A stretch of 64,000 nucleotides of DNA from Phallusia mammillata (GCA_965637545.1 OZ281496.1:27900001-27964000), one strand, 5' to 3'; shown: positions 42,678-62,318, counted from the first letter of the stretch. The notes: a model not told the origin generated them from the sequence alone. Translations and numbers: made by a program.

Positions 42678-45163
42678 TTAGAGCGGGAGGATAGCGTTAA
42701 TTTGTTTTGTAAGTCCAGAGCCAATTGCAAGGAAAATACACATAACCGCTGACAACCAGCCAAGAATGTAGGAATACCCATAGAATATATCCAGAATTGG
42801 ATCCACGTTTGATGTGAAAAAGGACAAGGCGATAATCTCCATGATAGCTGAAAAAACAAGAAGTTTACGATTGCGTTTTTTGTCTTGTACTGTCAAAAAT
42901 TCAATGAAGTTAAATAAAAATGAAAGTGAACAGATGTGTTGAACACCATGAGTAGATAAATATGCTATTGCGACCAGGCATACTATCAAGTTTTTAGATC
43001 TCTTCTGGAAAATGTATTTTTATTTCCATGTTTCGACGTCCTAGTCGCATTCAGTGTTATTTACCCTGATGATGACGACCTGTATAGGACGTCGAAACGT
43101 CTGAATAAAAGTACATTTGCCAGAAGAGCTCTATAAACTTGACCATGAGTCGATATGGACTTGATCGGTTCAAACCAGTTTTACAAACATGTATCTCGAA
43201 ATTTCTTACCAACTAGCAACAGTTAAGGCCTGAGGTAATAATTTTATATCTGTCACCTAAAGTTTTGAAACTTCTCTATAGTCTAGAATCTTGCATGGAC
43301 GTCCGGTATTTAAATATACTTATGAACACAAATGATTATCCTAGAATATTTGTACTGATAAGACATTCGAGGTATTGTGTCTAACATTAACTTCCGTATA
43401 GCATGGGTGCCATGGTTTCGATAGCAAAACATACGTTTTTATGACCAAGTATTGCTCATCCAGCAGTTTTATTGTAAACAATCGACGTTTCGACGTCCTA
43501 TACAAGTTTTTTATGTTCCGTTGCCATGAAAACATTCAGAGCGTGACCAATTAAAGTGCCAATTTACTTTAACAATGTTTGACCTACAAAACTCTCATTT
43601 TCGAGAAAACCCGTAAAATATTTAGTAGACGACACACAATTCAACAATGTCACTGTTTGTTTTCGAGGTTAAGGCACTACGTCCGGTTTTGCTATGCGAC
43701 GCTGACTGCATTGAGTTTAAATATAGTTAAAAGCAAGTGACTTTATGTCATTTATTCTACTATTAAACCTCCATGCGACATAGACTTGCCTAACAAAGTT
43801 AAAGCAAACACCCACTTTATTACACAGCGTCAAAAGTCCAGTAGTGAGATTCAGCCGTTTCGCACCTGTTTTATAGAACCATCTCACAAAATTTTATGAG
43901 ATCAGCGAACCAGTTAGCATTACTGATTACTGTCAATGGACTTTTTGTAACAGAATCCGCTAAAAAATATAACTTTTGTAAAAAAAAATTGAATCCCACC
44001 ACTGCAACAGTCATCTATGGTAAACACAGGTTGATACCGGAATGTCAGGTAAAAGCCCATTTGCATGGCGTATAAGAAAGCAAGTTGTTGAACTTTTCAA
44101 CATCGAAACTTAAGTTTTTTCGGCAAATGCTTCTGACATCTAAAAAACATCTACGTGCCTTTATGTAAACTTTTATGTAATTAAATTGTCATTTTTACCA
44201 CAAGCTAAAATCTTTAAGACCACGTGATGGTTTACAGTGGTATTTTATACTAGTATTTTAAGCGAATCAAGCTTGTCTCCCAAGCATTTCTATAAATTAA
44301 GGCACAGGCTAGAAAACGTACTATATGATATATAAATGAGCTTTAAGGTCCATCCCAATGTGTTTGTATGTTCATTTTAAACCAGTAGGCTTATATTTTT
44401 TACAACAGCTATGGACAGATGTTGGTCAAGTGTCCTAAGTTGAAACTCTTTTTATTTTTAATACCTGCCAAAGCAAAGCTCCCTGGCAATCCTTTCGCAG
44501 TAATCCAAGCATCCAGAGAATAATTTAGAAACAAAACCCGGAAACAGTGGATTACGGCAATCAACAGTAATATGGTGGCAATTATAGCAAATATCCTTGT
44601 GGGCCAATGAAACCACTCTTCTTGGAAAGCTACATAGAAAAGTATAATTGTTGTATTTAACTGTAAGTCCACCATAACCAAATAGGTTGACCACTTTGTG
44701 GTACAGGAAAACATCAAAAAGTTACAACTAACAATACAAGTATAAAATATAACCGAAAAGCATAAACTTGACTCATGCAAAATCAAAGATTTTTGGGAGA
44801 AAATAAGCAGGTAGCAAGATTTGACTTAGTTTGTTCTGTATTAAATGATTTACATGAAACTGCACGTTTACATTCCATTCAAACTTGTTTACAAGCTAAT
44901 GTAAAAGGTTTTATTCATAGTCGTGTGCGGCAGTATTGTTACACATTCCATTAAAATATTCCTTTACTTGCATTTTTAAATCTAACAAAACCAATATACT
45001 TACTTCCGATAAACGATGAACAAAAACCAGCAAAGCAATACTCCCATAAACCTTTAGAGTCAAGTGGCGACCAGACCCAGACAGCCGTTGTCAGGGATAT
45101 TATTTCAAACAGAAGAGCCACGGAAGCAAAGAATGTCAAAGTTTTGAAACCACAATTCAGCAT
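42678..45163 (-). CDS. PMP22/claudin-superfamily protein, copy C (164 aa)
   Basis: Exons 45163-45004, 44629-44465, 42847-42678; W..SPLDSKGLWEYCFAGFC; WPTRIF; YGYSYILGW. Confidence 0.9.
42959..43141. mobile_element. Hammerhead-bearing fold-back insertion (Penelope-like or retrozyme-like), internally deleted
   Basis: 14-bp TSD ACCATGAGT(A/C)GATA at 42945-42958 and 43142-43155; same left end as the 51813 element; complete hammerhead core on the plus strand. Confidence 0.75.
43057..43110 (+). ncRNA. Minimal type-I hammerhead ribozyme
   Basis: TTATTTACC-CTGATGA-T-GACG-A-CCT-GTAT-AGG-A-CGTC-GAAA-C-GTC/TGAATAAAA. Predicted cut after GUC at 43101. A G-to-T change weakens the first stem I pair. Confidence 0.6.
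43839..44004. mobile_element. hAT-type MITE, same family as 47013-47193
   Basis: Ends CAGTAGTGAGATTC / GAATCCCACCACTG; TSD CAAAAGTC versus CAACAGTC. Confidence 0.75.
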
Positions 45164-47012
45164 TCTGTCTTGTATTCAATTCTGATTCTTTTTAATATAG
45201 GCAACACAACTGTTGTTTAAGAAGATCTTTGATTGAACAAATTCAAGTAAATGTTAGACTTTTTTATATGCTAGGTCTCTTTCTGCGTTTGTAGTTTCAA
45301 TTTTACTTGACTACGTTCGTATTTTAATGTGTCTACCTATAATATTCAAATCGCTGCTAACTTTGGGAAATTGGATTGTATATTGCAATTCTTTCCACAA
45401 TAACGCCTTAAACTTAAAGTTACGATGACGCAAACATGTGTAAAATTCAATTGTTTTACCAAATTTAAATAAACTTAAGCTTAGAAGTAATATTTTTTTT
45501 ATTACGATGCTTCTTTAAAAATGTCCTGAAGTCGTTGGCTGAATTAATTTTCAACTGATCATAATTCGCCTACGGACTCAGTATTTAACAAGTACCCCGT
45601 TTACATTGTGAACGATCGTAGGACGTGTTAATATTGTTTGCACATTCTAAGTTACGATTCCTGGGCACCGTTCCCTTGGAAACAGTTTCGACTGGTAAAG
45701 TTCTTTAGTATGTCGTGTATTGTAAAATGCATTGAGTACGCAAAGTTTTGGGGCAAAATTATTTTTTTAAATATCCGTAATTGGTCAAAACGATACTAAA
45801 GGATTTGGGATATTATTGCTTAAAATGTGGCAAATGTACAAATCAGAGACAAAAGATTACATTTAGAAATGTATTGCACGTATTCATGTTACGACATTAC
45901 ACACAGTATTTCAAAAACTGTCAAAAACGCCATATGCTGTTGTGATAAAAATAATGCTCCTATATCTATCCTCCTACATACTCCAAATCACACGATTCTA
46001 TGGACGCATTGATCTGTTTATTTTTTTTTCAATTAATTACTTTTTTGTGGCGTTTTTATTTCCTTTTTTATTTTTATTTTTTATGTTGTACAACTGTCAC
46101 GTTATATCGTCACTGTGTTTGTGTTGCACCCTGGCTTCTGGCGCCGGAAACTATCCAACAGGGTTTCTTTTGCTGGTTTCTTTTCCTGTTGAACCCCACC
46201 CTCGTTCCCTAACACGGGTGGTTAGCTGTTAGGTCCCAACTTGACTGGTCCCACGAACGTTGCCGCCCCAGTCTTGATATCCCAATGCGCCAACCCCACC
46301 CTCTATAATGTGAGTCCCTGCCACATAACGCCTTTAGTAACGGTGTAGCTACAGCGCGTTTATCATCTTTCCACCAATTGTCGCGCTTTATAACGTCCCA
46401 ACGTTGCGCAGCTATTTCCGGCTTGGTGAATATTTTAGCGCAATTGTGCTGCTATGATTGTATCACCGGCGAAATAAACTCAACTCAACTCAATAAAATA
46501 TCGACGTGTTATTCGACGAATGGTTGGGTTAGGTTATAACTCGCCACAAACGAAACTACACCTGTTTAGAGCTTTATCGACCCCTAACGGTAATGTTGTT
46601 GAAATTGTTTGCAAATCGATTACATTTATTGTTAGGGTACTATTTTCAATCTTTGAAAAAACAGGTTACCGTCATAAAAATCTTTCCGTTATTCTTTTTT
46701 ATGTCTATACCTGTCGGAAATGTCAGTATTTCTTTATTGAACAGCGAAATTATATTATCTTACTGTTGAAAATAAAGTATAAGAAAAACAAACACGGAAA
46801 TCACAGATTGGCATTAGAACATTTGAACAAGTACACTTTGGAACAAAATTAGGCGCAAAATCGTTTAACAAACAAATGCAATAACAGCCCAGTATTGCCC
46901 GTAAAAATACAGCAAACAGCAAACATTGCATTATAGTGTACAAAAGGTTTCATTGTTGGTTGTATTTGTGTTTAAATTTGTTTTTAAATTCAACCACCCA
47001 AAAGAGTGCAAC

Positions 47013-47193
47013 CAGTGGTGGGATTCAGTCGGTTCGCACCGGTTCTATAGAACCGTGTTGCTAAATTTTGTGAGTTCAGCGAATCGGTTAGCATTACTGG
47101 TTACTGTCAATGGACTTTTTGTAACAGAACCGACTGAAAAATATGACTTTTGTGATAGAACCGGTTGACAAAAAAATATGAATTCCACCACTG
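47013..47193. mobile_element. hAT-type MITE
   Basis: Ends CAGTGGTGGGATTC / GAATTCCACCACTG; degenerate TSD AGTGCAAC versus AGTGTAGC. Confidence 0.75.
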
Positions 47194-47437
47194 AGTGTAG
47201 CCCTTTTGAATTTGCATCAAACATTCGGTGTTCAACGATTTACCTATTAACGACTTATATAGTATATAATCAAGGCACGTCTTTTCGGCAATTTTAATTG
47301 ACAAATTGAATATTTATTCCCACATCTTAAAAGAAACGAAAAACAAATTTTAAATTCGTATTGCAAAGAATTTTTTATGAAAATCGTAAGGAATTGTATA
47401 CTACATTTGATTTTAAATTACTACGATCAGATGACGT

Positions 47438-49564
47438 TTATGTGCCGGAAACATTGCGTTGATTTTGAAATATTTTAATTATAGATGCTGAACTAAGGGC
47501 AAGGAAGACACACATAACCACTGCACACCAGCCAAGAATGTAGGAATAACCCCAGGTGACTCCGGTAACTAGATCGATGTTCGCAGTGTAAAAGCACAAG
47601 GACACTATCGCCATACTAGCTGTAAAACAAGAGGTTTAAAGTTACTTTTTTGTTTTGTAGCCTACTAACAAAAGCAACTAAAAATAAATAAAAATGAAAC
47701 TAAAACTTATGTCTTGAACACACGAGTTGGTTCAAACCAGTTTATACCAACCTGTATTTCGTGATTTTTTTTACGAACTCGCAACAGTTAATCTTGGTAT
47801 GCCCGAGTTAATAAATTAATATTTGTCTGCTAAAGTTTTGAATTTTCTCCATAGTCTCAAAGCATGCAAGGACGTCCGGTATTTAAATATAATTTTAAAC
47901 ACCAATGATCAACCTAGAATATTTGTACTGATAAGACATTCGAGGTATTGTGTCAAATATTAACTTCCGTGTAGTAGTAGGTGCCATGGTATTCGTTGGC
48001 ACAACTCAAGTTACAACCGTCTGATGGCATGACAACATTTATGAGCGTGATTAATTTACGCTCCAACCGATTAATCAATGTTTGAGGTACAATTTTTTTA
48101 TCGCACTTGCGAGAAAACCCGTGAAATATTTAGTAGACCGCACACAATACAACAAAGTTACTTGTTGTTTTCGAGCAAAAGGCACTACGTTCGTTTTAGC
48201 TGTATGACGCTTCCTGCATCGAGCGAAAGTGAAAATAATACCATGTAATCTTTAGTCATCTAAACTGCTATTAAAACTTCATGCGCCATGGACCTGCCTA
48301 ACAAAGTGGAAAACAAACCCATTTTACCCAAGTTCGTCAACACTTATCTATTACAAACACAGGGGCGTTAAAATCTAAATGGCGCAGGTGAAAGCCTATT
48401 TGTATCGCGTATTATAGGCCAAGTTATTAAACCTTTCAAATAGTAAAACCTAAGTTAATTTTTTTAGGCTAATGCCTCTGACATAAAAAAAACATCGACG
48501 TACCTTTATACGAACCTATATCTAATTAAATTGACATATTTTACCACAATCGATAGTCTTTCAAATTACACTATCATAGAAACAAACCAAGCACGTACTA
48601 TGGCATTTTATACCATCTTAGTACGCCAGGTCTATTAATGACGTTATACCGAATCAAGTCGGTCACACAAGCATTTCCCATGAGACAATATACAGGCTAG
48701 AAAACGTACTATGATTTAAAAATGGGTATACCGTGATTGCTGGTCTGCATAAACGCTTAAGGGCTGATCCCTGTACGTGTGTATGTTCACTTTTTACTAG
48801 TATATTTTTACACGAGGTCTATGGATGGATGTCGGCCCATTCTCCGGAGTTGAAACTGTTTCTATTTTTTATTGTTGTGCTGAGGTTAACTTTAATTTTG
48901 TCACATTACCTGCCGAAGTAAAGCTCCCTGGCAATCCTCTTCCAGTTGCCCAACCATCAAGAGGAATATTTTGAAACAAAATCCGCAGACAGTGGATTAC
49001 GGCCGCCAACAATGCTAAGGTGGAAATTATTGCAAAAATCCGTGTCGGCCATTGAAACCAAACGTCCAAAGAAGCTACATGGAAAGAGATTGAAGTATTT
49101 AAATGTAAGACCACCGTGTTGACCACTTTGTAGTACTTTAATACCATCAAAAAATACAACTAAGTTTATGAAATATTAACTAAAAACTACATTTGAATTG
49201 TGCATGAGAAAATACTTTTTGGGAGTAAATGGGAACCTCACTTTTATTCGGTAAGTTATCACTTGGTTTGCTCTTTCAAAAGCTCGTGTAACACGTTTTG
49301 TTTGTAGTCATATGTTAATGTAACAATGTTCAACATTCCATAAAAAGATCTATTCCTTAGCTAGCATGCATTTTTATGAAAGTTAACAAAACCAACATAC
49401 TTACTTCCGATAAACGATGAACAATAGCCCAAACTGCAATGTTCCCATGATCCTATATAATCCACTGAGGACACGAGTCAGGCAGCCGTTGCCAGAGATA
49501 TTATTTCAAGCACAAGGGCCACAAAAGCAAAGAATGTCAAAACTACCTAAGCAATTTTCTGCAT
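47438..49564 (-). pseudogene. PMP22/claudin-superfamily copy D, pseudogene
   Basis: Exons 49564-49405, 49074-48910, 47619-47438. Exon 1 has TAG at codon 6 (49549-49547; TTG in copy E), TGA replacing the conserved Trp at codon 29 (49480-49478), and GLW changed to GSW. Confidence 0.88.
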
Positions 49565-50226
49565 TTTGTCCTGTATTTAATACTGATTCTTTTTGATAGG
49601 CAACAAAACTATTGTTTGTAAAGATCCCTAATTGAACAAAGAAAAGTAAATGTTAAACTTTTTTTATGCTGTGTCTGTTTTTGCGTTTGTAGTTTGATAT
49701 TGATTTGACTACGTTCGTATTTTAATGTTTCTACCTACAACTTTCAAATGCGCTGCAAGTTTTGAAATAAAACTTTGGAATATTGACTTCCCCATTGATC
49801 ACTTGTTTTACGAAATTTAAATTTTTTAAAATTTAAAACTTTGGCTAAATTAATTTTCAACTGATACTTCGCCAACGGACTCCGTGTATTTAACAAGTAC
49901 CCCGTTTACATTGTGAACGATCAGAGGGCGTGTTACTATTGTTTGCACATTCTGAGTTAGTCACAATCCCTTGGAAATCATTTGGACTGGTAAAATTCTT
50001 TATGTATGTTGTAAAATGTATTGAGTACACAAAGTTTTTAACAAACGTTGAGGCACAAATTCAAAAATCTGGGTAACTGGTCTAAGGAGTTTGGGATATT
50101 ATCGCTTAATATGTGGCAAATGTATAAATCAGAGACAAAAGATTACATTTAGAAATACAATTGTACGTATTAATGTTACGGCATTACACACAATGTTTTA
50201 AAAACTGTCAAAACACGCCATATACC

Positions 50227-50356
50227 TAGAAACACTATGCACGGACTTGAAAAGTAGTTTAATCATAAACATTACTGCCAAGGTAGTGGTGTATATAGAA
50301 TACATCGTGTAGACGTTTCGACAATATCTGTTGTCATCATCAGTACAAACATGTAC
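50227..50356 (-). mobile_element. Hammerhead-bearing short insertion, second subfamily
   Basis: TSD TATACC at 50221-50226 and 50357-50362; the paralogous site near 45930 (GCCATATGCTGTTGTGA) is empty; shares sequence with 23528-23648. Confidence 0.7.
50304..50353 (-). ncRNA. Minimal type-I hammerhead ribozyme
   Basis: Minus strand: CATGTTTGTA-CTGATGA-T-GACAA-CAGATA-TTGTC-GAAA-C-GTC/TACACGATG. Stem II is a perfect 5 bp; stem I is TGTA/TACA plus CAT/ATG. Confidence 0.7.
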
Positions 50357-50451
50357 TATACCGTTGTGACAAAAAAAATATACCGTTGTGACAAAAATAA
50401 TAAAATATCGACGTGTTGTTCAACAAATTTTGTGTTAGGTTGAAATTGCCT

Positions 50452-50564
50452 GTTTTTTTGTTTTGTTTTTTCACGGGGTTCGAACAAGGTCACTCTCGGG
50501 GACGAATCCCGATCAGGTTTTTCAGTCTCTATTTGGGTCGGGCGCGCCAGGCCATTCGGCCACG
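50452..50564 (-). mobile_element. tRNA-derived SINE, same family as 36790-36910
   Basis: Minus strand TGGCCGAATGG...CCTGATCGGGATTCG...GTTCGAACCCCGTG followed by an A-rich tail. Confidence 0.8.
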
Positions 50565-51409
50565 TTCCTGCCCTGAAATTGTCTGTTAACCAAACGAAAC
50601 CTGCTTAGAGCTTTGTCGACCCCTAACGGTGATGTTGTGGACATTGTTTGCAAATCGATTACCTTTCTTGTTGGGTTACTATTTTCAATCTTAAAAGAAA
50701 CAGGTTATCTTTTTAGCAATCTTTCCGTTTTCATTTTTTATCCTTGTACCTGTCAGAAATGTCATTATTTATTTATTCATCACCGAAATTATATTTATTA
50801 TTCTACTGTTGAAAATACAGCATGAGAAAACCAAACACGTAAATCACAGATTGGAATTGGAACTTATAAATAATTACACTTTGGATCGAAATGAAACGCA
50901 AATTTGTTTAACAAACACATGCAAGAACCGCGCAATATTGCCCGAAAAAATACATACTATATAGCTAACAAGGCGTTGGAGTGTTAAAATGTTCCATAGA
51001 TTGCATATATACAATCAAGGCACGCCCAACGTCTTTTCGGCAATTTTAATTGACAAATTGAATATCTATTCACACATCTTAAAAGAAACGAAAAACAAAT
51101 TTTAAATTCGTATTGCAAAGATTTTTTTATGAAAAACGTAAGGAATTATATACTACATTTGATTTCGAATTATTACTACGAGCTGGTAACGTTTATGTGC
51201 CAGAAACATTGTGTTGATTTAATGTGAAACGCTGCAAAATTAACTTTAATTTACAACAAACCAAAACCGAATTATAACACTATTTGAAGACCGGGAACAT
51301 ATCTATTTCATTTTTGTCTTCTGTTATCATAAAATCAGCGTTCAAAAACTTTATCATTGAACTAAATAGCAGAACTGAATCATATGACATGGAATTTTCT
51401 TCGGTCACA

Positions 51410-54400
51410 TTAAGAAGTCACATGAAATCTTTTGATTACAAATCCAGAACCAATAGCAAGGAAGACACACATGACCACTGCGCACCAGCCAAGAATGTAT
51501 GAATAACCCCAGTTGACCCCGGGAACTAAATCAATGTTCGCTGTGTAAAAAGACAAGGCCACAACCTCCATGATCGCTGAAAAACAAGAAGTTTAAAATT
51601 ACTTTTTCTTGTTTTGTAGCATACTGACAAAAGCAACTAAAATTGGATGAAAATAAAACAGATATAACACCAGGGTTAGACAAAGACGTTGTCGGTTCGA
51701 ATCGGTTTATAGTTTATACGAACCTGTATTTTGGGATTTATCGAGTTTTACGAACTAGCAAAAGTTGTACCTGTACGGCTAAGCTTATTGTGCCCGAGTT
51801 AATAATTTAATAAATAAGCTGTTGCTGCCAGGCATAGTATCAAGTCTATAGAGCTCTTCTGGCAAAAGTATTTTTATTCCGACGTTTCGACGTCCTATAC
51901 AGGTCGTCTTCATCAGGGTAAATAACACTGAATGCGACTAGAACAGTGCACGATAAACAAAGGAAAAAAGAATGAAACGCAAGCACGTCACAACGCAACG
52001 AAAACACCGCGCGATAANNNNNNNNNNNNNNNNNNNNNNNNNNNNNNNNNNNNNNNNNNNNNNNNNNNNNNNNNNNNNNNNNNNNNNNNNNNNNNNNNNN
52101 NNNNNNNNNNNNNNNNNNNNNNNNNNNNNNNNNNNNNNNNNNNNNNNNNNNNNNNNNNNNNNNNNNNNNNNNNNNNNNNNNNNNNNNNNNNNNNNNNNNN
52201 NNNNNNNNNNNNNNNNNCGCATTCAGTGTTATTTACCCTGATGAAGACGACCTGTATAGGACGTCGAAACGTCGGAATAAAAATACTTTTGCCAGAAGAG
52301 CTCTATAGACTTAATAATTTAATATCTGTCAATAAGGTTTTGAATCTTCTCCATAGTCTCAACCCATACGGGCGTCCCGTAATTAAATACACTTATGACC
52401 GACGTGAAATATCTGGACTGATAAAACTAGATGAGGTATTGTATCAAATATTAACTTCCGTGTAGTAGATGCCATGGTTTTCGATAGCACAACTGAAGTT
52501 ATAACGTTTTAATGGCATTGAACACATTTGAAAGCGTGAATAATTTACGCGCCAACCTGATTTAACGATGTTTGATGTACAAAACTCTCATTTTCGAGAA
52601 AACCACAATTAAACTCACAATTCAACAATGCCACTGTTTGTTTTCGAGGTTAAGGCACTACGTCCGGTTTTGCTATGCGACGCTGACTGCATTGAGCTAT
52701 TAAAAGCATTGAGCTATTAACTGAATTCAAAAGCAAGTGACTTTTCGTCATTTATATTACTATTCATTTTACCCAACATTGTCAACACTCATCTATAGCA
52801 GTGCTCTTCAACCTTTTTAGTGACGCGGAACCCTTAAGGTATTTTGTCAAACTTTGCGGAACTCCCATAAAATAATTTTAATGAATGTAACACAAGTAGG
52901 CCACATCAAAGAAAAAAGATGCATACACATCCAAAGCACATCACAAAGGTTGACTTGAATTAAACGGTTAACTGAAACGCATTGCCGTGTTATTTGGATC
53001 GGTCGTTTCTACATTAATCTCGCAACTTGGCTAGAGTGTGACAAGGTTGTATTTATTACGTCACAATTGATCAATGGTGTAACAAAGGTTAACAATATTG
53101 CACAGGCGAGCATTGCTGTTCGAAACAATGATATTATGAATCGTTCATGTTCGAATTGCTACTCCCCCATAAAGTTCACGGAACCCCGGTTGAAGAGCTC
53201 TGATCTATAGCGAACACAGATGCGTAATTGATACTAAATGTCAAGTAAGTTCAGACATATTTATTACTATATTTTGTTTAAAAGCGCTGAAATAAAAACA
53301 ACCTGATAATTGATGTATCACATTTAATTATCAACTTTTGCCTATAGCAGTGGTTCCCAACCTTCCATGGACCGTGGCCCCCTAAAAGTGTCATTTTTGC
53401 CTGGTGGCCCCCTTCATGTAACCTTGTATGTCCTGTGGCCCCCTTAAAGTGTAAATGGCAAACTCGTGTGGAAATTGGATACTAATATCGGCTTTAAACG
53501 CAGGTCGAATAGAGTAAATAATAAGGGTCCGCATTCGTAAAAAGCCTCGATATAGACAAACAGTATGCAAAATAGTTGATTAAATTAGGGACTTTTTAGT
53601 GAATGTTTCTGGTAAATCTACACCTGTGGCCCCCTTGGGGGGCCATGGGCCCTGGTTGGGAACCACTGGCCTATAGTGTTGTTAGCAACTGGCGATTCCG
53701 TTAAAAAGCAGGCTAAAATCTTCCGAAACACATGTTTGATGGTTGTTCGTGCTTAAAACGGACCCCTTGCATTTTGAATTTTTTTTTCTGAGGTTATGTT
53801 TGGTCACATTACCTGCCGAAGTGAAGCTCCCTGGCAATCCTCTTGCAGTTGCCCAAGCATCCAGAGGATAATTTTGAAACAAAACCCGCAAACAGTGGCA
53901 TACGGCAGCCAACAGTGATAATGTGGAAGTTATTGCGAAAATCCGTGTCGGCCAATGAAACCAAACGTCCAAAGAAGCTACGTGGAAAAAAGATTGTTGT
54001 ATTTAAATTTATGAACACCAAAGCTACGGGTTGACCACTTTGAAGTACGTTAATAACATAAAACAATTACAAATAAGTTTATGAAATATTAACTAAAAAC
54101 TACATTTGAGATGCTAACATGAAGCGTCGATGCAGACCAGCGATCACGATAATACATATCGATAAATCATAGTACGCCAGGCCTATTAAAGGTGTGTACC
54201 GAATCAGCTGGTCTCCCAAGCATTCTCATATGGCAGGGCACAGACTAGAAATATCTAGCCACATGGGAATGCTTGGGAGACCAGCTGATTCGGTACACAC
54301 CTTTAATAGGCCTGGCGTACTATAATTGATGACACTTGAGATGTACATAATAAAATACTTTTTGGGAGAAAATGGGAACGTCAATTTTGTGAGATATCAC

Positions 54401-54695
54401 TTAGTTCGCTATATTATGAACTCTTTCAAAAGCTCTTGTAAAAGGTAGTCATATGTTAATGTAGCATTGTTCAACATTCTAAAAAAAGATTTACTCTTAG
54501 CTAGCATACAGTTAACGTAAAACCAATATACTTACTTCCGATAAACGATGAACAATAGCCGAAAATGCAATGTTCCCATAGTCCTATAGAGTCAACTGAT
54601 GATACGAGCCAGGCAGCCGTTGCCAGAGATATTATTTCAAGCACAAGAGCCACGAAAGCAAAGAACGTCAAAACGGCCAAAGCAATTTTCTGCAT
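51410..54695 (-). CDS. PMP22/claudin-superfamily protein, copy E (163 aa)
   Basis: Exons 54695-54536, 53977-53813, 51576-51410; W..SSVDSIGLWEHCIFGYC; WPTRIF; WGYSYILGW. Intron 2 contains the assembly gap, so the joining of exon 3 is assumed. Confidence 0.85.
51873..51925 (-). ncRNA. Minimal type-I hammerhead ribozyme, sense to claudin-like copy E in intron 2
   Basis: Minus strand: TTATTTACC-CTGATGA-A-GACG-A-CCT-GTAT-AGG-A-CGTC-GAAA-C-GTC/GGAATAAA. Confidence 0.7.
52018..52217. other. Assembly gap (200 N)
   Basis: N-run seen directly, centred in an inverted repeat. Confidence 1.
52229..52281 (+). ncRNA. Minimal type-I hammerhead ribozyme, inverted twin of 51873-51925
   Basis: TTATTTACC-CTGATGA-A-GACG-A-CCT-GTAT-AGG-A-CGTC-GAAA-C-GTC/GGAATAAA; predicted cut after 52273. 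Confidence 0.7.
52799..53202. mobile_element. hAT-type MITE
   Basis: TIR CAGTGCTCTTCAACC / GGTTGAAGAGCTCTG; TSD ATCTATAG at 52791-52798 and 53203-53210. Confidence 0.9.
53348..53668. mobile_element. hAT-type MITE
   Basis: TIR CAGTGGTTCCCAACC / GGTTGGGAACCACTG; TSD GCCTATAG at 53340-53347 and 53669-53676; repeated GTGGCCCC subterminal motifs. Confidence 0.92.
54169..54323. repeat. Fold-back (inverted duplication) of a SINE fragment
   Basis: About 60-bp arms ATAGTACGCCAGGCCTATTAAAGGTGTGTACCGAATCAGCTGGTCTCCCAAGCATT and its reverse complement. Paralogous introns in copies C and D carry this sequence only once. Confidence 0.85.
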
Positions 54696-56056
54696 TTTGT
54701 CCCGTATTTAATTCTGATTCTGTTTAGTTATGGGCAACAAAACTAATGTTTAAGATCTACTTGGTTGAACAATGAAAAGTAAATGTTAGACTATTTTGTA
54801 TACTGAGTCTGTTTCTGCGTTTGTAGTTTTAATTTGATTTGACTACGTTTGTATTTTAATGTTTCCACCTATAACTTTCAAATGCGCTGCAAATTTAGAA
54901 ATAAAACTTTGGCAAAATGACTTCCCTATTGATCACTTGTTGTACGAAATTTAATTTTTTTTTAATTTAAAACTTTGGCTAAATTAATTAAAAAAAAATT
55001 TTGCATCTTAATTACTATGCTTCTTTAAAAATAACTTGCCCTGCGGTCGTTGGCGGAATTAATTTTCAACTGATAATTCGCCAACGGACTCAGTGTATTT
55101 AACAAGCACCCTGTTTAGTGTGTATTTAACAAGCATTGTGAGCGATTATGGGGCGTGTTAATATTGTTTGCACATTCTGAGTGACTCACGTTCCCTTTTG
55201 GAAATAATTTCGACCATTAAAGTTATTTAGTGTGCAATTTTTTTTTGCGAATTTTTCGGTCAAGTTTTAAACTATCATATTTTTAGTCTCATTCTTGACT
55301 AAAACATTGTCTTGTGTTTTTAATACCCAGCAAGCAGATGATTAATCATTGAGCACGCATTTTGCTTTGGATGTTATACTTATTGAGCATATATATTGTT
55401 AAAATCATCGTGCATGCAAGTTTTAAATAAATGTTGGGAAATATTGAACTCCAAATTCTGCTAAGAGGTATAAAATGAAAGAAAATGTTAGAGAACCTTT
55501 GACTCGAAACACACATGTGACGAGAGTATAAATCAAAGAAGGATTTATTTAAAGGTGTAATGTCACGACATTACACAACATATTTGTGTCAATATACGCC
55601 ATATGCTTTTGCAATAAAATAACATAAAAATGACGTTGAATTCGACGGAATTACTTTCAAAATGAAACCCGTTCACCTTTTTAACGACCCCCAATAGCAA
55701 TATTGTTGGGATACTGTTTGCATATCTATTACATTTGTTGATTGGTTACTATTTTCATTCTAAACAAACAGGTAATCTGTATGGCGGCCTTTACGTTTTC
55801 TTTTATGTGTATACCTGTCACAAAATTCATTATTTTTCTACTTAACACCAAAATTTTTTTTCTACTCTTGAAAATCAAGCATAAGAAAAAAACACGTAAT
55901 TCGCAAATTGGCATTGGAACATTTGAACAATTACATTGAAAACAAAAGCATCACAAGTTCTTTTAACAAACAAATGCAAGAAAACACAATATTGCCCATA
56001 TAATACATAGGCCAACAAAGCATTTAAGTTTTAAAAGGTTCCATTATTTGTTGTAT

Positions 56057-57627
56057 TTATGCATCTTCTCGAAAAATTGCGATAATAATACAAGCTCCAA
56101 TTGCCAAAAAAATGCTTAGAATTGCCGAGCACCAACCCAGAATGTAGGAGTACCCCCATTCAAAAAACGATTCTGTGCTGTTGTCCAAAGCCTCATAGAC
56201 CGTGTAAAGGACCAGTGCCACAATTTGACAAATTCCTGAAAAATATGTGCATTCAGAGCATAGTTGTAAACGGTCCGAGTTCAAAATGACAAGCCCGAAT
56301 CTCGGTTTAAACCAGAATAAATAAGGTTGGCCCGAAAGCTTGGTTTACCCTAACTACGAACCTTGTACAAACCTTTTGTATGTAGGGGCGATCAACTAGA
56401 GGCTATTTCATATTTTAATAGCGTGGTCATATTTGTAAATGCTCTTTACTAACTTATATTTTAGTTTATGTTTTACAACAAGTTTTTTTTTGCCATGCGT
56501 GCAAACAACCGCAGGTAAACCGTTGGGAGAAAAGGGGTTTAATGACCGTCTTGGGTCCCCGAAAACTTGACCTTAACAATTTCCGTGTATTTCATTAAAC
56601 AAACTGTAGCATCCTACTTAACATGTTATACCTACATATAGCCTATTTTCTTGATACTATATTTGTTGTACCTACATATATTTTCTTTATGCAATTGTTG
56701 TGTCTATATGTATGAATTAGGATTTGCCCTCATTCTCGTACACATGATCGTTAACAGAATTATACATATTTCAAGAAACCTTTATAATCGATGTAGTTTA
56801 TTCACCTGCAGCCACATAACCTCCGGATAAACCCTTTGCAAAGCTGATCGGAATATTGCAAAACAAAACCACGAGACTGTAAATAACCATGGCAACCAGA
56901 ATCGATGTTGTTATTAATGCGAAACCCTGTGTGATCTTGTAAAACACAGGGACGGGATCTGTAAAAACAAAATATTAACTGGACTAATTATTCTGTTAAT
57001 GGCTTCTCGAAGAAAATATCTTGCGGGTTAAAATAGGGCAAAAAATGTAATAACTTAATCTAAAGAACATAAAAGCTGAAGACAAAAGTATTTGATTTTA
57101 AAACGGTTTTTTTTTCGGGTCGTTAAATTTACAAGTTCTTGGCGGCTATTAACATTTTTGAATAAGCCATTTTTATAAAAGAATTGCCAATAAATAATTC
57201 CTAAACTGCAAACAATACACACTGTTTTTACCTATATGGTCTCACCAGCACACAAACCAAAAATATAGGCCACATCCTACGGCACTCTAATAGTAACGGG
57301 CTGAAAAGCCATGCATCACTGATAAAACTTATCGCAGGTCGAAAAAGTGTTCACTGTCTGCAGCATATTTATCATTTTATGACTTAAAGCTTTATAAAAG
57401 TGATTCGCGTTTATTAATAATTAAATTACAGTCAAGAAATTGCAAATATTGCTAAAAAACTCACCAAACGATTCGCAGTCGTCAGGTGAACACGCTTCCC
57501 ACAAGCCGTATGAATAACCATTAAACTTCGCCAAGACACGCCACGCTGGTGTAGCTACTGACACCACATTGAAAATTAAGGCTGTTGCCCCGAAGAACGA
57601 CAGCAAAGCTAAAGAAATCTTTTGCAT
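56057..57627 (-). CDS. PMP22/claudin-superfamily protein, copy F (164 aa)
   Basis: Exons 57627-57465, 56958-56806, 56235-56057; W...GYSYGLWEACSPDDC; WGYSYILGW. Confidence 0.9.
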
Positions 57628-58694
57628 TTTGACACGTGTACAACGAGTTTACTGTTTTAAGTTCTAAATCTAGCTTTCTAAAAACAGAATGTGTTTTGTA
57701 TTTATACTTGCATATATTTAAAAGAATTCCGTTTTATGAAATAAATTCAATGTGAAATGCTAGCAGTTCTCAACAAAATCACTAAATTTCAAATTTGAAA
57801 CACACGTATCTTAGGTCAAAATGGAAGCCAATAACATCACAAAGGAACAAGCTTTAGAACACAACCCGATATATATGCTGAAGTCAAAATAAAAAGGGGC
57901 CTTTTTTTGGACGGTCATGTTTAAACAGTCATTTTTATAACACAAACATATGGAAACAATCTGGCGAAACATTTAAAGATGTGCGAAAAATACGATTGTG
58001 CACACATAAATGTCATTAATGGCACTAAATCGTCGTTTCTGAAATCAATACACCTCGATTTTGTCGTGTGGTGTTATTGCTTTTTGTCTTTTTGTTTCCA
58101 ATAGCAAAAACGCATTTAGACCACACTGATGGACGTATAACAATACAGCGTACAAAATAAGAACACTACATATGGAACTGCGCGTGATTCTTGTATAAAC
58201 TATACAAGTATAGTCAAATACGTACTGAATGGCAACAAAACACCTTGCAAACAGACATCAAACATAAGCATGATAAATTAACGTCATCCCAGAAATCTCG
58301 AGTTTGTCGCTTAAAAATGTTTAACAATCTGGGCCTTTGTTGCCACAGATACCCTTTAGGGGATTTTACGAAATGGAAACACTGCAACCAGTTTAGTTGA
58401 ATTACTTTTCGTATTTAGTAAGGTTGCCTTTGACTTTAACCTTTCACGGAGACTATTGAATCGGAATTGAGGTGACGAAACGGCGTTTGAACTTAAGAAA
58501 GTGTATATTTTCACTGGCCCTATCATTTGTTTAGCAATGTTTTAATGATTCGTCACTGATATGTAGCAACTTGTTGGGAGTTAAAGTTGTCTTTACCCAA
58601 CTTTCCCCCCCAAAAATACATTTGTATTGTTAACAATCCTTTAAAATATTAAAATATAAATTTGAAAAAATTGAACAAAAATAATTCATTTTGG

Positions 58695-59663
58695 TTACTC
58701 GTCTTCAAGTCCGTCCTCTTCTCTCAACGGCGACAGAATGACTTCTTCGACAATAGGAATAAACGAGACTCTTCTTCCTATTGCTCCCAAATAAACAGGG
58801 TCTTCAGATTGAACCTTCCCTGCATTCTTTTCAGGAGAAATGCTGTTTAACATTCCATGTGATATTCGTAAGTCTTGGAGTTTTTGCCGTTCGCGAGCTA
58901 AGGTTTGTTGGTCGTTGTTGTTTGCTTGGGAAGTCAAGCTCAACGCTGGGGCCGACTGTCGCCTGACTCTCTGTGAATTTCTGTTGGTTTGCGCAATGCC
59001 GTTGGGTGTCGTTGTGTGCTGCATTGAAACTCGGCGCTTTGGTTGGGCGGTGTCTCTACTGGCGGCATTTTGTCGATGTTCCTGTGACAAGAGATGCAAA
59101 ACATACATGCTTGATTCATAGCAAAGTTATAAGTAGAGTTCGTGACTGACTTTAAACGCGCTATATTTGCCGATTTGTTTTCAACTTTCAGGCTTGATTG
59201 GGGCTTTGTTTTACTTTAAACCGTGTTCGTTCCGGGTTATTTTTCGATTTGAATAAAGAACTCATAACGTTGGGTAAATGCATCAGCGGTGTACATCAAT
59301 TGGCACTAGACTGGGATCTGGCAACGGCCTGGGTAACAAGTCAAACAAATGAACTTCAATGGTAAAATTTCCTAAATCTTCAAAAACACCGTTCGTTTAA
59401 GATGTCTTACGTTTTAAACACAATTTGTTTAAAATATTAACACTAAAAAAGCGTACCTGTGCATATTTATTATCTATGTTGTTTAAATTTTAACTACTCC
59501 ATTGCTACGTAGTTTCGCAATTCATACATTTCGTATTCTACCTTGATATCCCTTGGATCTGCAATACGCCTCGGTCCCTTCTTTACAGCGGTTTTGCCGT
59601 TCGCTGTCGGGCGTCCGGTAGATCCAGATCGGCGTTGCGGGGCCGTTACTGGTTGCTGATGTC
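58695..59663 (-). CDS. Last two exons of an unknown, probably disordered protein; upstream exons not located
   Basis: Exon 59663-59542 (GHQQPVTAPQRRSGSTG...RRIADPRDIK) splices in frame to exon 59081-58695 (EHRQNAASRD...GRRVSFIPIVEEVILSPLREEDGLEDE*) at canonical sites. Confidence 0.65.
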
Positions 59664-62034
59664 CTGTGAATAAACAACGTTGGGTCAGTTGTCATTTGTC
59701 TCCACTTGTTCGTCGTTAATCACAAACTGGACAACCGTCGCATAAAAGGTTTCGCCATAAATTATGCCAAGATTAGAAAAATGTACGAATGTTTTATTTC
59801 ATAGTTTTTGGCTTTTATGCTGTGCACTTTGTGCGAATGCGACAAAAACTATTCTTTAAGTTGTAGAGTATATCTCTCTTTTTAATGTATGAAATCCTAA
59901 GAATTGACCTAAATAATAGGGTAGCTTACATCGTGTTTTTTCGAGTCCCTTAATGGCCCTTCGTATACTAAGGGCATGAAAGGAACTTTAAAAACTAAAC
60001 TAAAATACAACATTTTACTTGTTAGATAAACTTTTGAATGCTTGGTTTGTCATTGTCAGTGACTGGCAAAATTTGGACCGAACATATTACAAACCCACAC
60101 GTTGTAACAAATCAATCCAACAATGATTATTGTTCACTTTATTTGTGCGCGCGCCGCGATGTCCGAAACAATGTTGACCTAAAGCGTTGTAAACTCGATT
60201 TATGACTGATAGTTTGGCCCGTTTTAGAACTATGGACAAGCCTGTGGGCCGAGTGGTACAGGAAAGTTGTATCAAATCAGTAAATATTGAAAGCTCGGGT
60301 GTTGCTCATCAGTGTAAACACATCCGAGTGCTTGTTTAGGAAGCAAAACAAAGGATCTCCTTGTCACAGTAAACACGACATATTATATCGGGTGTGTGCA
60401 TATAGGTTCCAATTTAATTTTTCAATGTTACCTTTCAGCCATTTATGAATTTTTCAACTTGGTCTTGATGAATCGTGATCTTCGATTCGAAAGTACAATG
60501 GCTTTTTGTTCACAGCAAATAACAAATGTCACTAATATGTCTTTGAACATTCAACATATATCTATTTCAAGTAAACGATTTGTTCCCAGTTACGTGCTGA
60601 AATATAAAATGTGGCCCCTTTGCAGGCTCAGAATGCTTTTGAATGCAAGATAGTTTGAAAACATTCATGGATTTTTGACCTGTTTAAAATAGTCTTAACC
60701 TAAATGGTTTTATCAAGCAAATTTGTAACTTGAGGCCTCTTTAAATTTATCTTTTAAGACAAATCTTGCCATGCTTACCTCCGTTGTTTAGTCGAGGGTC
60801 ATTTACTGCCACTCTTCGTTGTTGTTTGTGCATCGTAGTCAACCAGTCCAATCACTTTCGAAATGTAGCTTCGTATTGCGGGAAGGTAAATAAAGTTCCC
60901 TTCATAAATCAAGCACAGTTTTATGTTTTGCTAGTTCCAAAAGCAAAGTAGGTTTTGCTTTAAAATCTGCTTTAAAATCAATGCTCTTTCCAGCAAATAT
61001 ACACCTACATAATAGTTCGGGAAGTGCTAAAACACAAACACAATTTGGGATGTAAAATAATCCGATGTAATGTTAGTGCTATATGTAAAACGTTTGCTGA
61101 TGGCAGAGGCTTGGCTGGAGTCATAAATAACGTCAGTTTATTTTCCCAACTCAGCGGTTTACCCTGAACAGCGGAAAGCCTTGTGTACCAATTTTGCGCC
61201 AGATGAAACGTTTTCATCTGTTGTTGGGCTCCTAGCAACTGACTTTGTGGCATTGACAACAAACTTGGCTAAAGTGATTTTATTAACGCTCTCATTTCAA
61301 AACACAAAGCATTTCCATGGGCGCAGACCCATATGACACAAGAATCATTTTGCTTCATTATAAATGCCTGTTGCTAATTTTGCTTGCTGTGATTTTATTA
61401 CTTTCCATTTATCAAAATTAAACAGACGTGACTGGCTACCACCTACTCAACCTTTGCTATCAGATATTGGAAAACTGTTTGCAAAGTCAATGTTGTTTTG
61501 CGATATCTTTATCCTTGCCTGTGGGAAAGCTGAGCGTTTAGGTTGTTAATGCACCTGAACATACAATAAATTGATCGAAAAATTAGCATACAAGATAATA
61601 CAATTAAATGAATGCGAACTGTGTGCTTTTGCGTTAAAATGTCACAAAACCTGTTCTAAAATTACCTGATTAAAATGTAACGAATTAAACTGAAACTGAG
61701 CTACGAATTTTACAAAAGAATAACTTCCAAATCTTTATTGCACCGTCGAAATTGTTAGAACAACTTGGTTAAGGACAAATACTTATGAAGTGCCAGACTT
61801 TGCTCTCATCAATCACTTTCATGTACGATGTACATAAGGAATGGTCGATACCTACGTCATACTACATATGCCCCAATGTATAGCTGCTCTCAGTTAATTT
61901 GTCTTCGGCCTACTTGTCAGAATACGTTTTCACACGATCTAACTTCAAGCCTTGCATGCATTTGGGTGCTAAAAGCATGCGAATCAATTTTGACTTCCAA
62001 TCTAGATACGGCTATGGACATTTTTGCTGAAAAA

Positions 62035-62318
62035 TATAAGATGTTGCTGCCAGGCATAATGTATAAATGAGTATTGCTCTTCCAGCAGTTTTTATGAGAA
62101 ATAATCGACCTTTCGACGTTGCGTACCAGACACTTTCATCAGAATAATGGCATATCTTGCAAGACAAAGACAGTCAAGGTTTTGTCTCGGAAGATAAGAT
62201 ATGACATTGTCCTAATGAAAGCCTTTTAATAGCCCGTCGAAAGGTCGAATATTTTTAATAAAAGCTGCTGGAGGAGCAATACTAGTTTGTACATTATGTC
62301 TGGCAGCAACAGCTTATT
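62035..62318. mobile_element. Fold-back element related to the hammerhead family, with degenerate cores
   Basis: Inverted arms GTTGCTGCCAGGCATAATGT...GTATTGCTC.TCCAGCAG share the terminus of the 51813 element. The left arm (minus) has CTGATGA...GAAAGGTC and the right arm has CTAATGA...GAAAGGTC. No clear TSD. Confidence 0.65.

What the first reader, a model, noticed from the sequence alone, without database searches (positions are those of the whole stretch)
42945..62318. Family of short hammerhead-ribozyme retroelements with asymmetric inverted arms and variable TSDs
Seen: five complete cores CTGA(T/C)GA-N-stemII-GAAA-short palindrome-UH, at 38930 (-), 43057 (+), 50304 (-), 51873 (-) and 52229 (+), plus degenerate or partial copies near 43445, 62105-62145 and 62205-62250. 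Stem II differs in sequence between subfamilies yet stays paired (GCC/GGC, GACAA/TTGTC, GACG.CCT/AGG.CGTC), which is natural covariation. Insertions have TSDs of 14, 14, 13 and 6 bp, unequal inverted arms, AATAAA just after the cut site in the main subfamily, and empty paralogous sites in neighbouring duplicates. Established: Penelope-like elements and non-autonomous retrozymes carry minimal type-I hammerheads with palindromic helix III thought to cleave as dimers, and PLEs often have inverted pseudo-LTRs. Inference: these are at least three subfamilies of non-autonomous ribozyme retroposons that mimic MITEs and would be misannotated as DNA transposons. All cores share one extra nucleotide after A9.
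Basis: partly seen in the sequence, partly recalled or inferred. Interest (0 to 1): 0.85.

Follow-up and report, generated by a model that had tools for sequence, protein, structure and literature searches.

The report
Truncated Penelope-like retrotransposon copies with hammerheads
The short "hammerhead elements" are real, but they are ordinary broken-off tail ends of four Penelope-like jumping-gene families that still have full protein-coding copies in the same genome, inserted in the head-to-head way already described for this class.

Summary
Hammerhead cores lie at 38944-38965(-), 43066-43097(+), 50316-50343(-), 51885-51916(-) and 52238-52269(+). Decayed or partial ones lie at 43440-43506 and 62036-62319. 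They are not chance: 12 pattern hits against 1.7 expected in the window, and 1,438 against 0 (reversed control) in the genome.

All four core types match the last 100-230 nt of four Penelope-like element (PLE) families. Each family has long copies elsewhere in this 240-Mb genome that encode reverse transcriptase plus a C-terminal GIY-YIG endonuclease. The window copies are 5'-truncated insertions:
- Their inner ends vary from copy to copy.
- They have 6-14 bp target duplications.
- In the clean inverted pairs, one arm carries an extra outer "tail" of about 27-82 nt.

I found no dedicated non-autonomous lineage, no short tandem array and no symmetric MITE ends.

The N gap at 52018-52217 lies inside one such insertion and was not filled. 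Self-cleavage was not testable. This scan reached the same reading on other DNA of this genome (s1-361502).

The parts
38882..39105 (-). PLE38 family, tail-less arm: last 224 nt of the element with hammerhead core 38944-38965 (helix II GCC/GGC, helix III palindrome AUAUAU)
   Evidence: 99% identical to L039 reference positions 3043-3264; sequence read
39106..39193 (+). PLE38 family, second arm of the same insertion: 6 nt of the element end plus the 82-nt tail. Target duplication is 38869-38881 / 39193-39205.
   Evidence: Same letters as the tail of L039 minus arm; flank repeat read
42958..43043 (-). PLE43 family, tail-bearing arm, truncated inside helix II (holds only the 3' half of the ribozyme)
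   Evidence: Matches L014 reference 2439-2522; absent from paralogous units 2 and 3
43038..43142 (+). PLE43 family, tail-less arm with complete core 43066-43097; predicted cut after 43101. Target duplication is 42946-42957 / 43143-43154.
   Evidence: 95% to L014 reference 2392-2496; flanks
43440..43506 (-). PLE62-type tail-less fragment, 5'-truncated inside helix II, with an 8-bp flank repeat
   Evidence: 92.6% to L040 reference
50227..50356 (-). PLE50 family, single arm with 34-nt tail and core 50316-50343 (helix II GACAA/UUGUC). The 6-bp flank repeat is 50221-50226 / 50357-50362.
   Evidence: 97% to L049 reference 3345-3442
51813..52017 (-). PLE43 family, tail-bearing arm with core 51885-51916; it runs into the assembly gap
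   Evidence: 96.5% to L014 reference 2318-2522; the letters beside the gap are the element's 3' untranslated region
52018..52217 (.). Assembly gap inside the PLE43 insertion. The interior is unread and its length unknown; it was not filled.
   Evidence: Both gap edges are PLE43 in opposite orientation at different reference positions. One 14-bp target duplication encloses both sides.
52218..52310 (+). PLE43 family, tail-less arm with core 52238-52269. Target duplication is 51799-51812 / 52311-52324.
   Evidence: 95% to L014 reference 2400-2498; 99% complementary to 51838-51936
62036..62168 (-). Old PLE62-related arm. The core 62111-62142 keeps CUGAUGA, but helix II and the helix III palindrome have decayed.
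   Evidence: 81% to L040 reference
62196..62319 (+). Old PLE62-related arm with a mutated core (CTAATGA). Both arms of this pair carry tail-like ends, and there is no clear target duplication.
   Evidence: 80% to L040 reference
22548..22580 (+). Isolated PLE43 tail fragment, outside the finding's range
   Evidence: 94% to L014 reference 2490-2523; flanks
23520..23586 (-). Decayed PLE50-like 3' fragment, outside the finding's range
   Evidence: 85% to L049 reference 3376-3438

Best explanation
The window holds about eight insertions of four families of canonical, endonuclease-bearing Penelope-like retrotransposons. I label the families PLE43, PLE62, PLE50 and PLE38.

Shown here:
- Every family carries a minimal type-I hammerhead about 60-105 nt before its 3' end.
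- The window copies are only the last roughly 70-230 nt of the element.
- Many insertions consist of two such pieces head to head, with 3' ends pointing outward. Their inner break points differ between copies.
- In the clean pairs, one arm has an extra outer tail.
- Insertions are flanked by 6-14 bp target duplications.

Inferred from the literature:
- The endonuclease makes a staggered cut, and the reverse transcriptase extends both DNA strands from the element RNA.
- Copying starts at either of two sites; the stretch between them is the tail.
- Both copies abort early and are joined in the middle. This would give unequal inverted arms with one tail.
- The hammerhead, lacking a helix III hairpin, can only be completed by pairing its palindrome (ACGU or AUAUAU) with a second copy. 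It is thought to trim precursor RNA read through tandem copies.
- Whether it cuts in vivo is unknown.
For: Link to coding elements:
- L014 (PLE43) has inverted arms of 868 nt around frames that hit RVT_1 and GIY-YIG. It shows the same 3' end, a tail on the forward copy only, and a 14-bp target duplication.
- L040 (PLE62) has an uninterrupted 817-aa frame between two direct hammerheads 2,598 nt apart.
- L039 (PLE38) has a 647-aa frame with RVT_1 and GIY-YIG between outward-facing hammerheads.
- L049 (PLE50) has a 748-aa frame, 30% identical to the PLE62 protein over RT and endonuclease.
- The endonuclease alignment keeps Y, C..C, Y.G.T, R, H, E and N invariant in all four families.
- 1,175 homologues (E<=1e-10) were found, and the named ones come from ticks, corals, fish and insects. 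Nearly all of the 120 listed carry RVT_1 in their precomputed domains, and a few also carry GIY-YIG.

Window copies: they match these 3' ends at 80-99% identity.

Truncation, not a fixed short element:
- In 11 sampled PLE43 loci plus the window, inner ends fall anywhere between reference positions 2286 and 2463.
- Outer ends fall into two classes, full or about 20-24 nt short.
- Every pair has one of each class.

Orientation: 10 of 10 close opposite-strand pairs among the first 100 genome hits are minus-then-plus, that is, 3' ends outward.

Abundance and youth: 1,818, 675, 846 and 244 first-look candidates for the four 3' ends; 1,779 candidates for the protein, several frames being 99-100% identical and unbroken.

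Published matches:
- PMC4209133: minimal hammerheads in PLE repeats, a long helix II, a short helix I, a nucleotide between 9 and 10.1, palindromic 15.2-16.2, opposite-strand pairs 100-700 bp apart, mostly truncated PLEs.
- PMC8557442: an inverted 5'-truncated copy, a 30-40 bp tail at one end, assembly trouble.
- PMC11167929: both strands cleaved and extended, and two start sites that define the tail.
Against: - No cleavage evidence. The only runs available were contigs of guessed RNA kind, which cannot show molecule ends.
- Rfam does not recognise the motif.
- Covariation inside the 43/62 group is not better than shuffles.
- The GIY-YIG Pfam hits are all just below the curated cut-off (18.6-22.1 against 22.6 bits). 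The profile hit to the I-TevI nuclease domain is not significant (E 0.93).
- The old 62036-62319 pair has tail-like ends on both arms and no clear target duplication.
- The 6-bp repeat at the PLE50 copy is short enough to be chance. It sits beside an unexplained 16-18 nt tandem duplication.
- The interior of the 51813-52310 insertion is unread.
Confidence: 0.9

Rival explanations
1. Some or all of the short copies belong to a dedicated non-autonomous, retrozyme-like or SINE-like lineage. It would borrow the PLE enzymes, be transcribed on its own, self-cleave as a dimer and perhaps circularise.
For: - Thousands of short copies against far fewer long ones.
- Some inner ends recur: reference 2373-2375 three times, 2391-2392 twice, 2296-2297 twice.
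- Non-autonomous PLE derivatives are reported in other lineages (Chlamys, PMC8557442).
- One tandem array joins about 3 kb of foreign DNA to a PLE43 3' end.
Against: - Inner ends are spread over about 180 nt, and both arms of a pair break at different points.
- Every short copy is collinear with the 3' end of a coding element at 92-100% identity.
- There are no same-strand hammerheads 150-1000 nt apart in the window or among the first 100 genome hits.
- The cargo of the tandem array exists at one locus only.
- No joints were seen in the contigs laid.
Confidence: 0.06
2. They are MITEs, that is, deletion derivatives of a DNA transposon with terminal inverted repeats that happen to contain a hammerhead-like motif.
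For: Inverted arms of 58-105 nt at 86-99% complementarity, with flanking direct repeats.
Against: - Outer ends are asymmetric: a tail sits on one arm only in the clean pairs.
- Arm lengths differ within and between copies.
- Single-arm copies with target duplications are common (L002, L004, L008, L010).
- Flank repeats range from 6 to 14 bp.
- The arms are the 3' end of RT/GIY-YIG elements.
- No transposase frame was seen in any long copy.
Confidence: 0.02
3. The sense-strand hammerheads are host-selected intronic ribozymes that regulate the triplicated host gene units at 42-56 kb.
For: Several copies lie inside a triplicated 4-5 kb unit. Another first-stage note reads these units as claudin-like genes (s1-394899); I did not test that.
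Against: - Each insertion is present in only one of the three paralogous units and sits at a different site.
- Copies are 95-99% identical to thousands of others genome-wide.
- They lie on both strands.
Confidence: 0.02

Closest known systems
Canonical EN+ Penelope-like elements (Penelope/Poseidon, Neptune, Nematis clades) and their insertion architecture (Evgen'ev and Arkhipova 2005; Craig et al. 2021, PMC8557442; PMC11167929)
   Same: - A single frame with RT followed by a GIY-YIG endonuclease.
- Heavy 5' truncation.
- Direct (L040) and inverted (L014, L039, L049) repeat arrangements.
- A tail on one side.
- Target duplications of variable length.
- A hammerhead in the repeat.
- Assembly breaks at such insertions.
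   Different: - The PLE38 tail is 82 nt, against the 30-40 bp quoted.
- Clade placement was not determined. PLE38 has a CxxCxxCxH motif in the RT-EN linker, which would fit Neptune or Nematis; this is inference only.
- I found no paper in the library that combines the terms Penelope-like, ascidian and hammerhead.
Minimal hammerheads (min-HHR) of metazoan PLEs (Cervera and De la Pena 2014, PMC4209133)
   Same: - CUGAUGA and GAAA boxes.
- G10.1-C11.1.
- One unpaired nucleotide between A9 and 10.1.
- A long helix II (5-8 bp in three families).
- A short helix I (about 4-5 bp).
- No helix III hairpin, but a palindrome at 15.2-16.2.
- Several consensus families per genome.
- Opposite-strand pairs 100-700 bp apart.
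   Different: - PLE38 has only a 3-bp helix II and a 6-nt AU palindrome.
- Activity was not tested here.
Retrozymes and metazoan hammerhead circRNA repeats (Cervera and De la Pena 2020, PMC7229834, cited from the reference list of PMC8557442)
   Same: Type-I hammerheads with a weak helix III, associated with retroelement mobilisation.
   Different: Here single hammerheads sit at the 3' end of coding elements or their truncated copies, and neither short arrays nor back-joined reads were seen.
MITEs and fold-back DNA transposons
   Same: Short, with inverted arms and flanking direct repeats.
   Different: The ends are asymmetric, arm lengths vary, flank repeats vary, and the arms derive from an RT-coding element.

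Membership tests
Penelope-like element (canonical EN+) | Reverse transcriptase domain in the element's single frame | tested here: met
   RVT_1 scores above the curated cut-off in the L040 frame (31.1 against 29.6 bits) and the L049 frame (33.8 bits). It scores below the cut-off in L014 and L039. Frames are 27-63% identical between families.
Penelope-like element (canonical EN+) | GIY-YIG endonuclease C-terminal to the RT, with Cys/His zinc-finger residues | tested here: inconclusive
   Pfam GIY-YIG is hit at the C-terminus of frames from three families, always just under the cut-off (18.6-22.1 against 22.6 bits; E 2e-4 to 2e-3). In all four families Y106, C110, C113, Y117, G119, T121, R128, H132, E178 and N190 are invariant. 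The second His is present in only 3 of 4. The PDB profile hit to I-TevI is not significant.
Penelope-like element (canonical EN+) | Pseudo-LTRs: partial tandem and/or inverted 5'-truncated upstream copy | tested here: met
   A direct arrangement occurs in L040 (hammerheads 2,598 nt apart on one strand). Inverted arrangements occur in L014, L039, L049, L041 and L042 and at window 38882-39193, 42958-43142 and 51813-52310.
Penelope-like element (canonical EN+) | [quoted passage not shown] | tested here: met
   PLE43: each of the 7 pairs examined has one tailed and one tail-less arm. The same holds for PLE62 (L030), PLE50 (L018, L020) and PLE38 (L038, L039, L042, window). The exception is the old 62036-62319 pair.
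Penelope-like element (canonical EN+) | RT phylogenetically within the PLE/telomerase-related clade | not tested
   No tree with reference PLE, LINE and TERT sequences was built. The homologues found carry no PLE names.
Hammerhead ribozyme, minimal type I (min-HHR of PLEs) | Conserved core: C3-A9 box, G12-A14, A15.1-U16.1 and H17 | tested here: met
   The core was read directly in four families. There are 1,438 genome matches against 0 for the reversed control.
Hammerhead ribozyme, minimal type I (min-HHR of PLEs) | Helix II closed by G10.1-C11.1 and preceded by one unpaired nucleotide | tested here: met
   Nearly all variants (14 of 15), including all four family types, score best with an offset of 1. 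Stems are 3, 5 and 8 pairs, and 8 with one mismatch. G21-C40 is invariant in alignment A2.
Hammerhead ribozyme, minimal type I (min-HHR of PLEs) | Palindromic 15.2-16.2 in place of a helix III hairpin, allowing a dimer | tested here: met
   ACGU follows GAAA in PLE43, PLE62 and PLE50, and AUAUAU follows it in PLE38. Energy-based co-folding was uninformative about the tertiary fold.
Hammerhead ribozyme, minimal type I (min-HHR of PLEs) | Self-cleavage at the predicted site | not testable with these tools
   Only contigs were available, with no raw reads. No table of molecule ends was produced.
Rfam Hammerhead_1 (RF00163) and other curated hammerhead models | Score at or above the gathering threshold | tested here: not met
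   There was no hammerhead match at the gathering score in the whole window or at E<=10 in 36000-64000. I therefore do not file it as a canonical Rfam hammerhead.
Retrozyme / hammerhead circRNA repeat | Non-coding unit bounded by two same-strand hammerheads (often tandem), with no autonomous coding partner of the same sequence | tested here: not met
   No same-strand pairs lie 150-1000 nt apart. Each type has a coding partner.
MITE | Symmetric terminal inverted repeats and a target duplication of constant length | tested here: not met
   The tail is one-sided and arms are unequal. Single-arm copies exist, and flank repeats range from 6 to 14 bp.

The most novel reading that the evidence does not exclude
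A subset of the thousands of short hammerhead-bearing 3' modules may be a self-standing non-autonomous lineage. It would be transcribed, cut by dimeric hammerheads and circularised, like a retrozyme. Alternatively, head-to-head copies transcribed within host introns may fold into 60-870 bp hairpins that feed small-RNA silencing of the PLEs. Neither reading was excluded, because no raw RNA reads were available.
Probability: 0.07. Interest if true: 0.55.

Novelty: new member of a known kind. Interest (0 to 1): 0.2.

Why it matters
It corrects the annotation. These fold-back-looking repeats should be masked as Penelope-like retrotransposon fragments, not as MITEs, novel ribozyme elements or host intronic ribozymes. 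The same correction explains the assembly gap at 52018-52217.

The genome holds young families: many frames are 99-100% identical and unbroken, and there are thousands of 3' fragments. In the clean pairs sampled, one arm is tailed and the other tail-less. That makes it a convenient natural data set for the two-start-site, both-strand priming model so far shown only in vitro for a lizard element (PMC11167929). That is useful, but it confirms known biology rather than changing it.

Tried and rejected
- Rfam, at the gathering score and at E<=10: no hammerhead hit. My inference is that the curated models need a helix III hairpin, so this does not count against the motif.
- Minimum-energy folding and co-folding of monomers and dimers. 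Helix II forms, but the predictions pair the conserved core with the ACGUC stretch. They say nothing reliable about the active fold, so I did not use them.
- Covariation count on eight variants of the 43/62 group. The register is specific (88.8% paired against 20-48% when slid) but no better than shuffles. I rely on the between-family comparison instead.
- Public runs. There were 20 holders in 6 studies, all Logan contigs of guessed RNA kind. They cover the PLE62 unit but show no joints and no end tables. This gives no verdict on transcription, cleavage or circles.
- PDB sequence search with the 817-aa frame found nothing. The endonuclease profile gave only a non-significant I-TevI hit.
- The tandem array in L013 was tested as a candidate non-autonomous element and rejected. 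Its about 3-kb cargo occurs only at that locus, and it has no PLE protein similarity.
- A search for the 16-nt leader reported by earlier agents found none in the window or in 50 loci.
I could therefore not make a wider census of hammerhead variants or target duplications.


Full report
**1. What is in the sequence**

A relaxed hammerhead pattern (CTGAYGA, 3-30 nt, GAAA) hits the window 12 times against 1.7 expected, and no shuffle reaches 12.
- CUGAYGA, then one unpaired nucleotide.
- A helix II of 3 (GCC/GGC), 5 (GACAA/UUGUC) or 8 pairs.
- GAAA, then a short palindrome (ACGU or AUAUAU) instead of a helix III hairpin.
- An H residue, then a 4-5 bp helix I closing onto the sequence just upstream.

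The partial copies are also real. 43440-43506 holds only the 3' half of a ribozyme. The pair at 62036-62168 / 62196-62319 is an old, roughly 80% identical relative with a degraded helix II, a broken palindrome and one CTAATGA box.

Rfam reports no hammerhead at its gathering scores or at E<=10. I attribute this to the lack of a helix III hairpin; that is my inference. In the whole 240-Mb genome, a stricter pattern ending in GTCGAAACGTC matches 1,438 times against 0 for the reversed control.

**2. What the copies belong to**

A 105-nt piece around the 43066 core has at least 1,818 first-look candidates in the genome at 94-97% identity. The other three types have 675, 846 and 244. Following hits that lay 2.6-5 kb apart led to long copies:
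- **L014 (PLE43).** Two 868-nt inverted arms surround frames that hit RVT_1 and GIY-YIG. The right arm ends with the hammerhead, about 70 nt, and a further 27-nt "tail". The left arm lacks the tail. A 14-bp target duplication flanks the whole.
- **L040 (PLE62).** An unbroken 817-aa frame with RVT_1 sits between two same-strand hammerheads 2,598 nt apart. This is the classic repeat-ORF-repeat form.
- **L039 (PLE38).** A 647-aa frame with RVT_1 and GIY-YIG sits between outward-facing hammerheads.
- **L049 (PLE50).** A 748-aa frame with RVT_1 is 30% identical to the PLE62 protein across RT and endonuclease. It also lies between outward-facing hammerheads.

The PLE43 and PLE62 proteins are 63% identical. 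PLE38 and PLE50 are about 27-30% identical to them.

The C-terminal domains of all four align with an invariant Y, C..C, Y.G.T, R, H, E and N. This is the GIY-YIG pattern with interleaved Cys/His residues, although each Pfam GIY-YIG hit falls just below the curated cut-off.

A database search found 1,175 homologues at E<=1e-10; the named ones come from ticks, corals, fish and insects. Nearly all of the 120 listed carry RVT_1 in their precomputed domains, and a few also carry GIY-YIG.

An RT followed by a GIY-YIG nuclease in one frame defines canonical Penelope-like elements (PMC8557442).

**3. Anatomy of the window copies**

BLAST of the four references against the window accounts for every item in the finding and adds two more (22548-22580 and 23520-23586). 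All are 3'-terminal pieces.

- **38882-39193.** This is one insertion. A 224-nt tail-less minus arm abuts a plus arm made of 6 nt of element end plus an 82-nt tail. A 13-bp duplication encloses it.
- **42958-43142.** A tailed minus arm is broken inside helix II. It joins a tail-less plus arm through a 3-nt overlap. A 12-bp duplication with one mismatch flanks it.
- **50227-50356.** A single tailed arm with a 6-bp flank repeat.
- **51813-52310.** A tailed minus arm and a tail-less plus arm lie inside a 14-bp duplication.

In 11 further PLE43 loci:
- Inner break points fall anywhere between reference positions 2286 and 2463.
- Outer ends fall into two classes, full length or 18-24 nt short of the reference end.
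- Every pair has one arm of each class.
- Single arms of either class occur.
- Flank repeats of 8-13 bp are found in 9 of 11.

Tails on one arm only are also seen in PLE62 (30 nt), PLE50 (34 nt) and PLE38 (82 nt). Among the first 100 genome hits, all 10 close opposite-strand pairs are minus-then-plus, so their 3' ends point outward.

The insertions at 42958 and 51813 are each absent from the two paralogous copies of the triplicated 4-5 kb unit. The 50227 insertion is absent from unit 1.

**4. The gap**

The letters left of 52018 are the PLE43 3' untranslated region on the minus strand, at reference position 2318. The letters right of 52217 are PLE43 on the plus strand, at reference position 2400. 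The two sides are therefore not continuous and in no common frame.

Both sides belong to one insertion bounded by one target duplication. What lies between is unread. It could be anything from a direct arm-to-arm junction to kilobases of element. Inverted PLE insertions are a published cause of assembly breaks (PMC8557442).

**5. How it most likely works**

Shown here: the link to coding PLEs, the 3'-terminal nature of the copies, variable inner ends, one tail per pair, outward orientation and the target duplications.

Taken from the literature:
- A purified lizard PLE protein cleaves and extends both strands of the target. It starts reverse transcription at two adjacent internal sites, and the interval between them is the tail (PMC11167929).
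- Two abortive cDNAs, primed from the two nicked strands and joined in the middle, would give exactly the unequal inverted arms with one tail seen here.
- The hammerhead sits in the repeat, so a read-through transcript of a tandem carries it upstream of the frame. In L040 the tail of one unit is directly followed by the next unit, which begins with ATG; I have not checked that this ATG is in frame.
- Without a helix III hairpin, the ribozyme can only be completed by pairing its palindrome with a second copy.
- Such motifs cleaved weakly in vitro, and only as dimers or with an engineered helix III (PMC4209133).
- The ribozyme was dispensable for insertion in vitro (PMC11167929).

In vivo cleavage here is therefore an inference, and I would put it at about even odds.

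**6. Tests of the rivals**

- **Non-autonomous lineage.** This predicts a fixed 5' end, or short same-strand arrays, and neither was found. The one tandem array that joins foreign DNA to a PLE43 end (L013) is confined to a single locus.
- **MITE.** This predicts symmetric ends and a constant duplication. The ends are asymmetric and the duplications range from 6 to 14 bp.
- **Host-selected ribozymes.** This is contradicted by presence in only one paralogue each and by near-identity to thousands of copies.

RNA evidence was not obtainable. The 20 holding runs are contigs of guessed kind. They cover the PLE62 unit but show no joints or molecule ends.

**7. Comparison with what is known**

Cervera and De la Pena (PMC4209133) describe minimal hammerheads in the repeats of metazoan PLEs with these features:
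- A helix II of 7-8 bp and a helix I of 4-5 bp.
- Conserved G10.1-C11.1 and palindromic 15.2-16.2.
- Several families per genome.
- Dual motifs 100-700 bp apart on opposite strands.
- Most motifs belonging to truncated PLEs.

Craig et al. (PMC8557442) describe the inverted 5'-truncated copy and the one-sided 30-40 bp tail.

Two things are particular here. The PLE38 tail is 82 nt. Also, I found no paper in the library combining the terms Penelope-like, ascidian and hammerhead. Earlier notes of this scan call the organism a sea squirt; I did not verify that.

**8. Earlier notes of this scan**

A follow-up on other DNA of this genome (s1-361502) reached the same conclusion for a 252-bp fold-back. 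Other agents report copies that begin with the spliced leader (s1-375378, s1-408599). No such leader occurs in this window or in my 50 loci.

However, contig loose ends beside the PLE62 hammerhead do contain the reverse complement of that 16-mer. I could not resolve the orientation and leave it as a side note.

**9. Verdict**

These are new members of a known kind, and interest is low (0.2).

Noticed in passing
L040:1215-1225 and 3813-3823 (contigs of runs X1, X5, X11): Loose ends of public contigs abut the PLE62 hammerhead within 6 nt of the predicted cut. They contain CTTATTCAAATAGAAT, the reverse complement of the 16-nt spliced leader named by earlier agents. The motif is absent from the window and from 50 loci, and I did not resolve the junction orientation.
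   Followed up: partly
L013:1-10000 (G000:C4:20951-20965 kb): There are at least four head-to-tail units of 3.26-3.28 kb, 100% alike. Each is about 3.0 kb of single-locus DNA without PLE protein similarity, plus a 233-nt PLE43 3' end with hammerhead and tail. This is either a local tandem duplication or a PLE-made partial tandem carrying foreign cargo.
   Followed up: partly
window 50357-50400: Beside the PLE50 insertion, the target sequence TATACCGTTGTGACAAAA is present twice in tandem, separated by a few A residues. Paralogous unit 1 has it once. This may be the trace of a complex or aborted integration.
   Followed up: partly
window 39112-39193; L039:1211-1292: The tail of the PLE38 family is 82 nt, about twice the 30-40 bp quoted for PLE tails.
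   Followed up: yes
window 36787-36902 and 50453-50566: A repeat with a tRNA-like GGTTCGAACCCCGTG box followed by an A-rich run. It is probably a tRNA-derived SINE.
   Followed up: no
window 36057-36325 and 54162-54330: Two near-perfect hairpins: 117-nt arms at 99% and 73-nt arms at 95% complementarity. The first gives only weak chance-level microRNA-model hits. They are MITE-like fold-backs unrelated to the PLE arms.
   Followed up: no
window 42400-56000: A 4-5 kb unit is present three times in tandem at 64-98% identity. Another first-stage note reads these units as claudin-like genes. The units have collected different PLE insertions since duplicating.
   Followed up: partly
window 38516-38543: A further CTGACGA...GAAA match on the plus strand has only a wobble-rich 5-pair stem. 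It is not matched by any of the four PLE references and is probably chance or a very old relic.
   Followed up: partly
L039:4921-5541: The PLE38 protein has a CxxCxxCxH motif in the linker before the endonuclease that the other three families lack. An extra zinc-finger-like linker motif is a published mark of the Neptune and Nematis clades.
   Followed up: no
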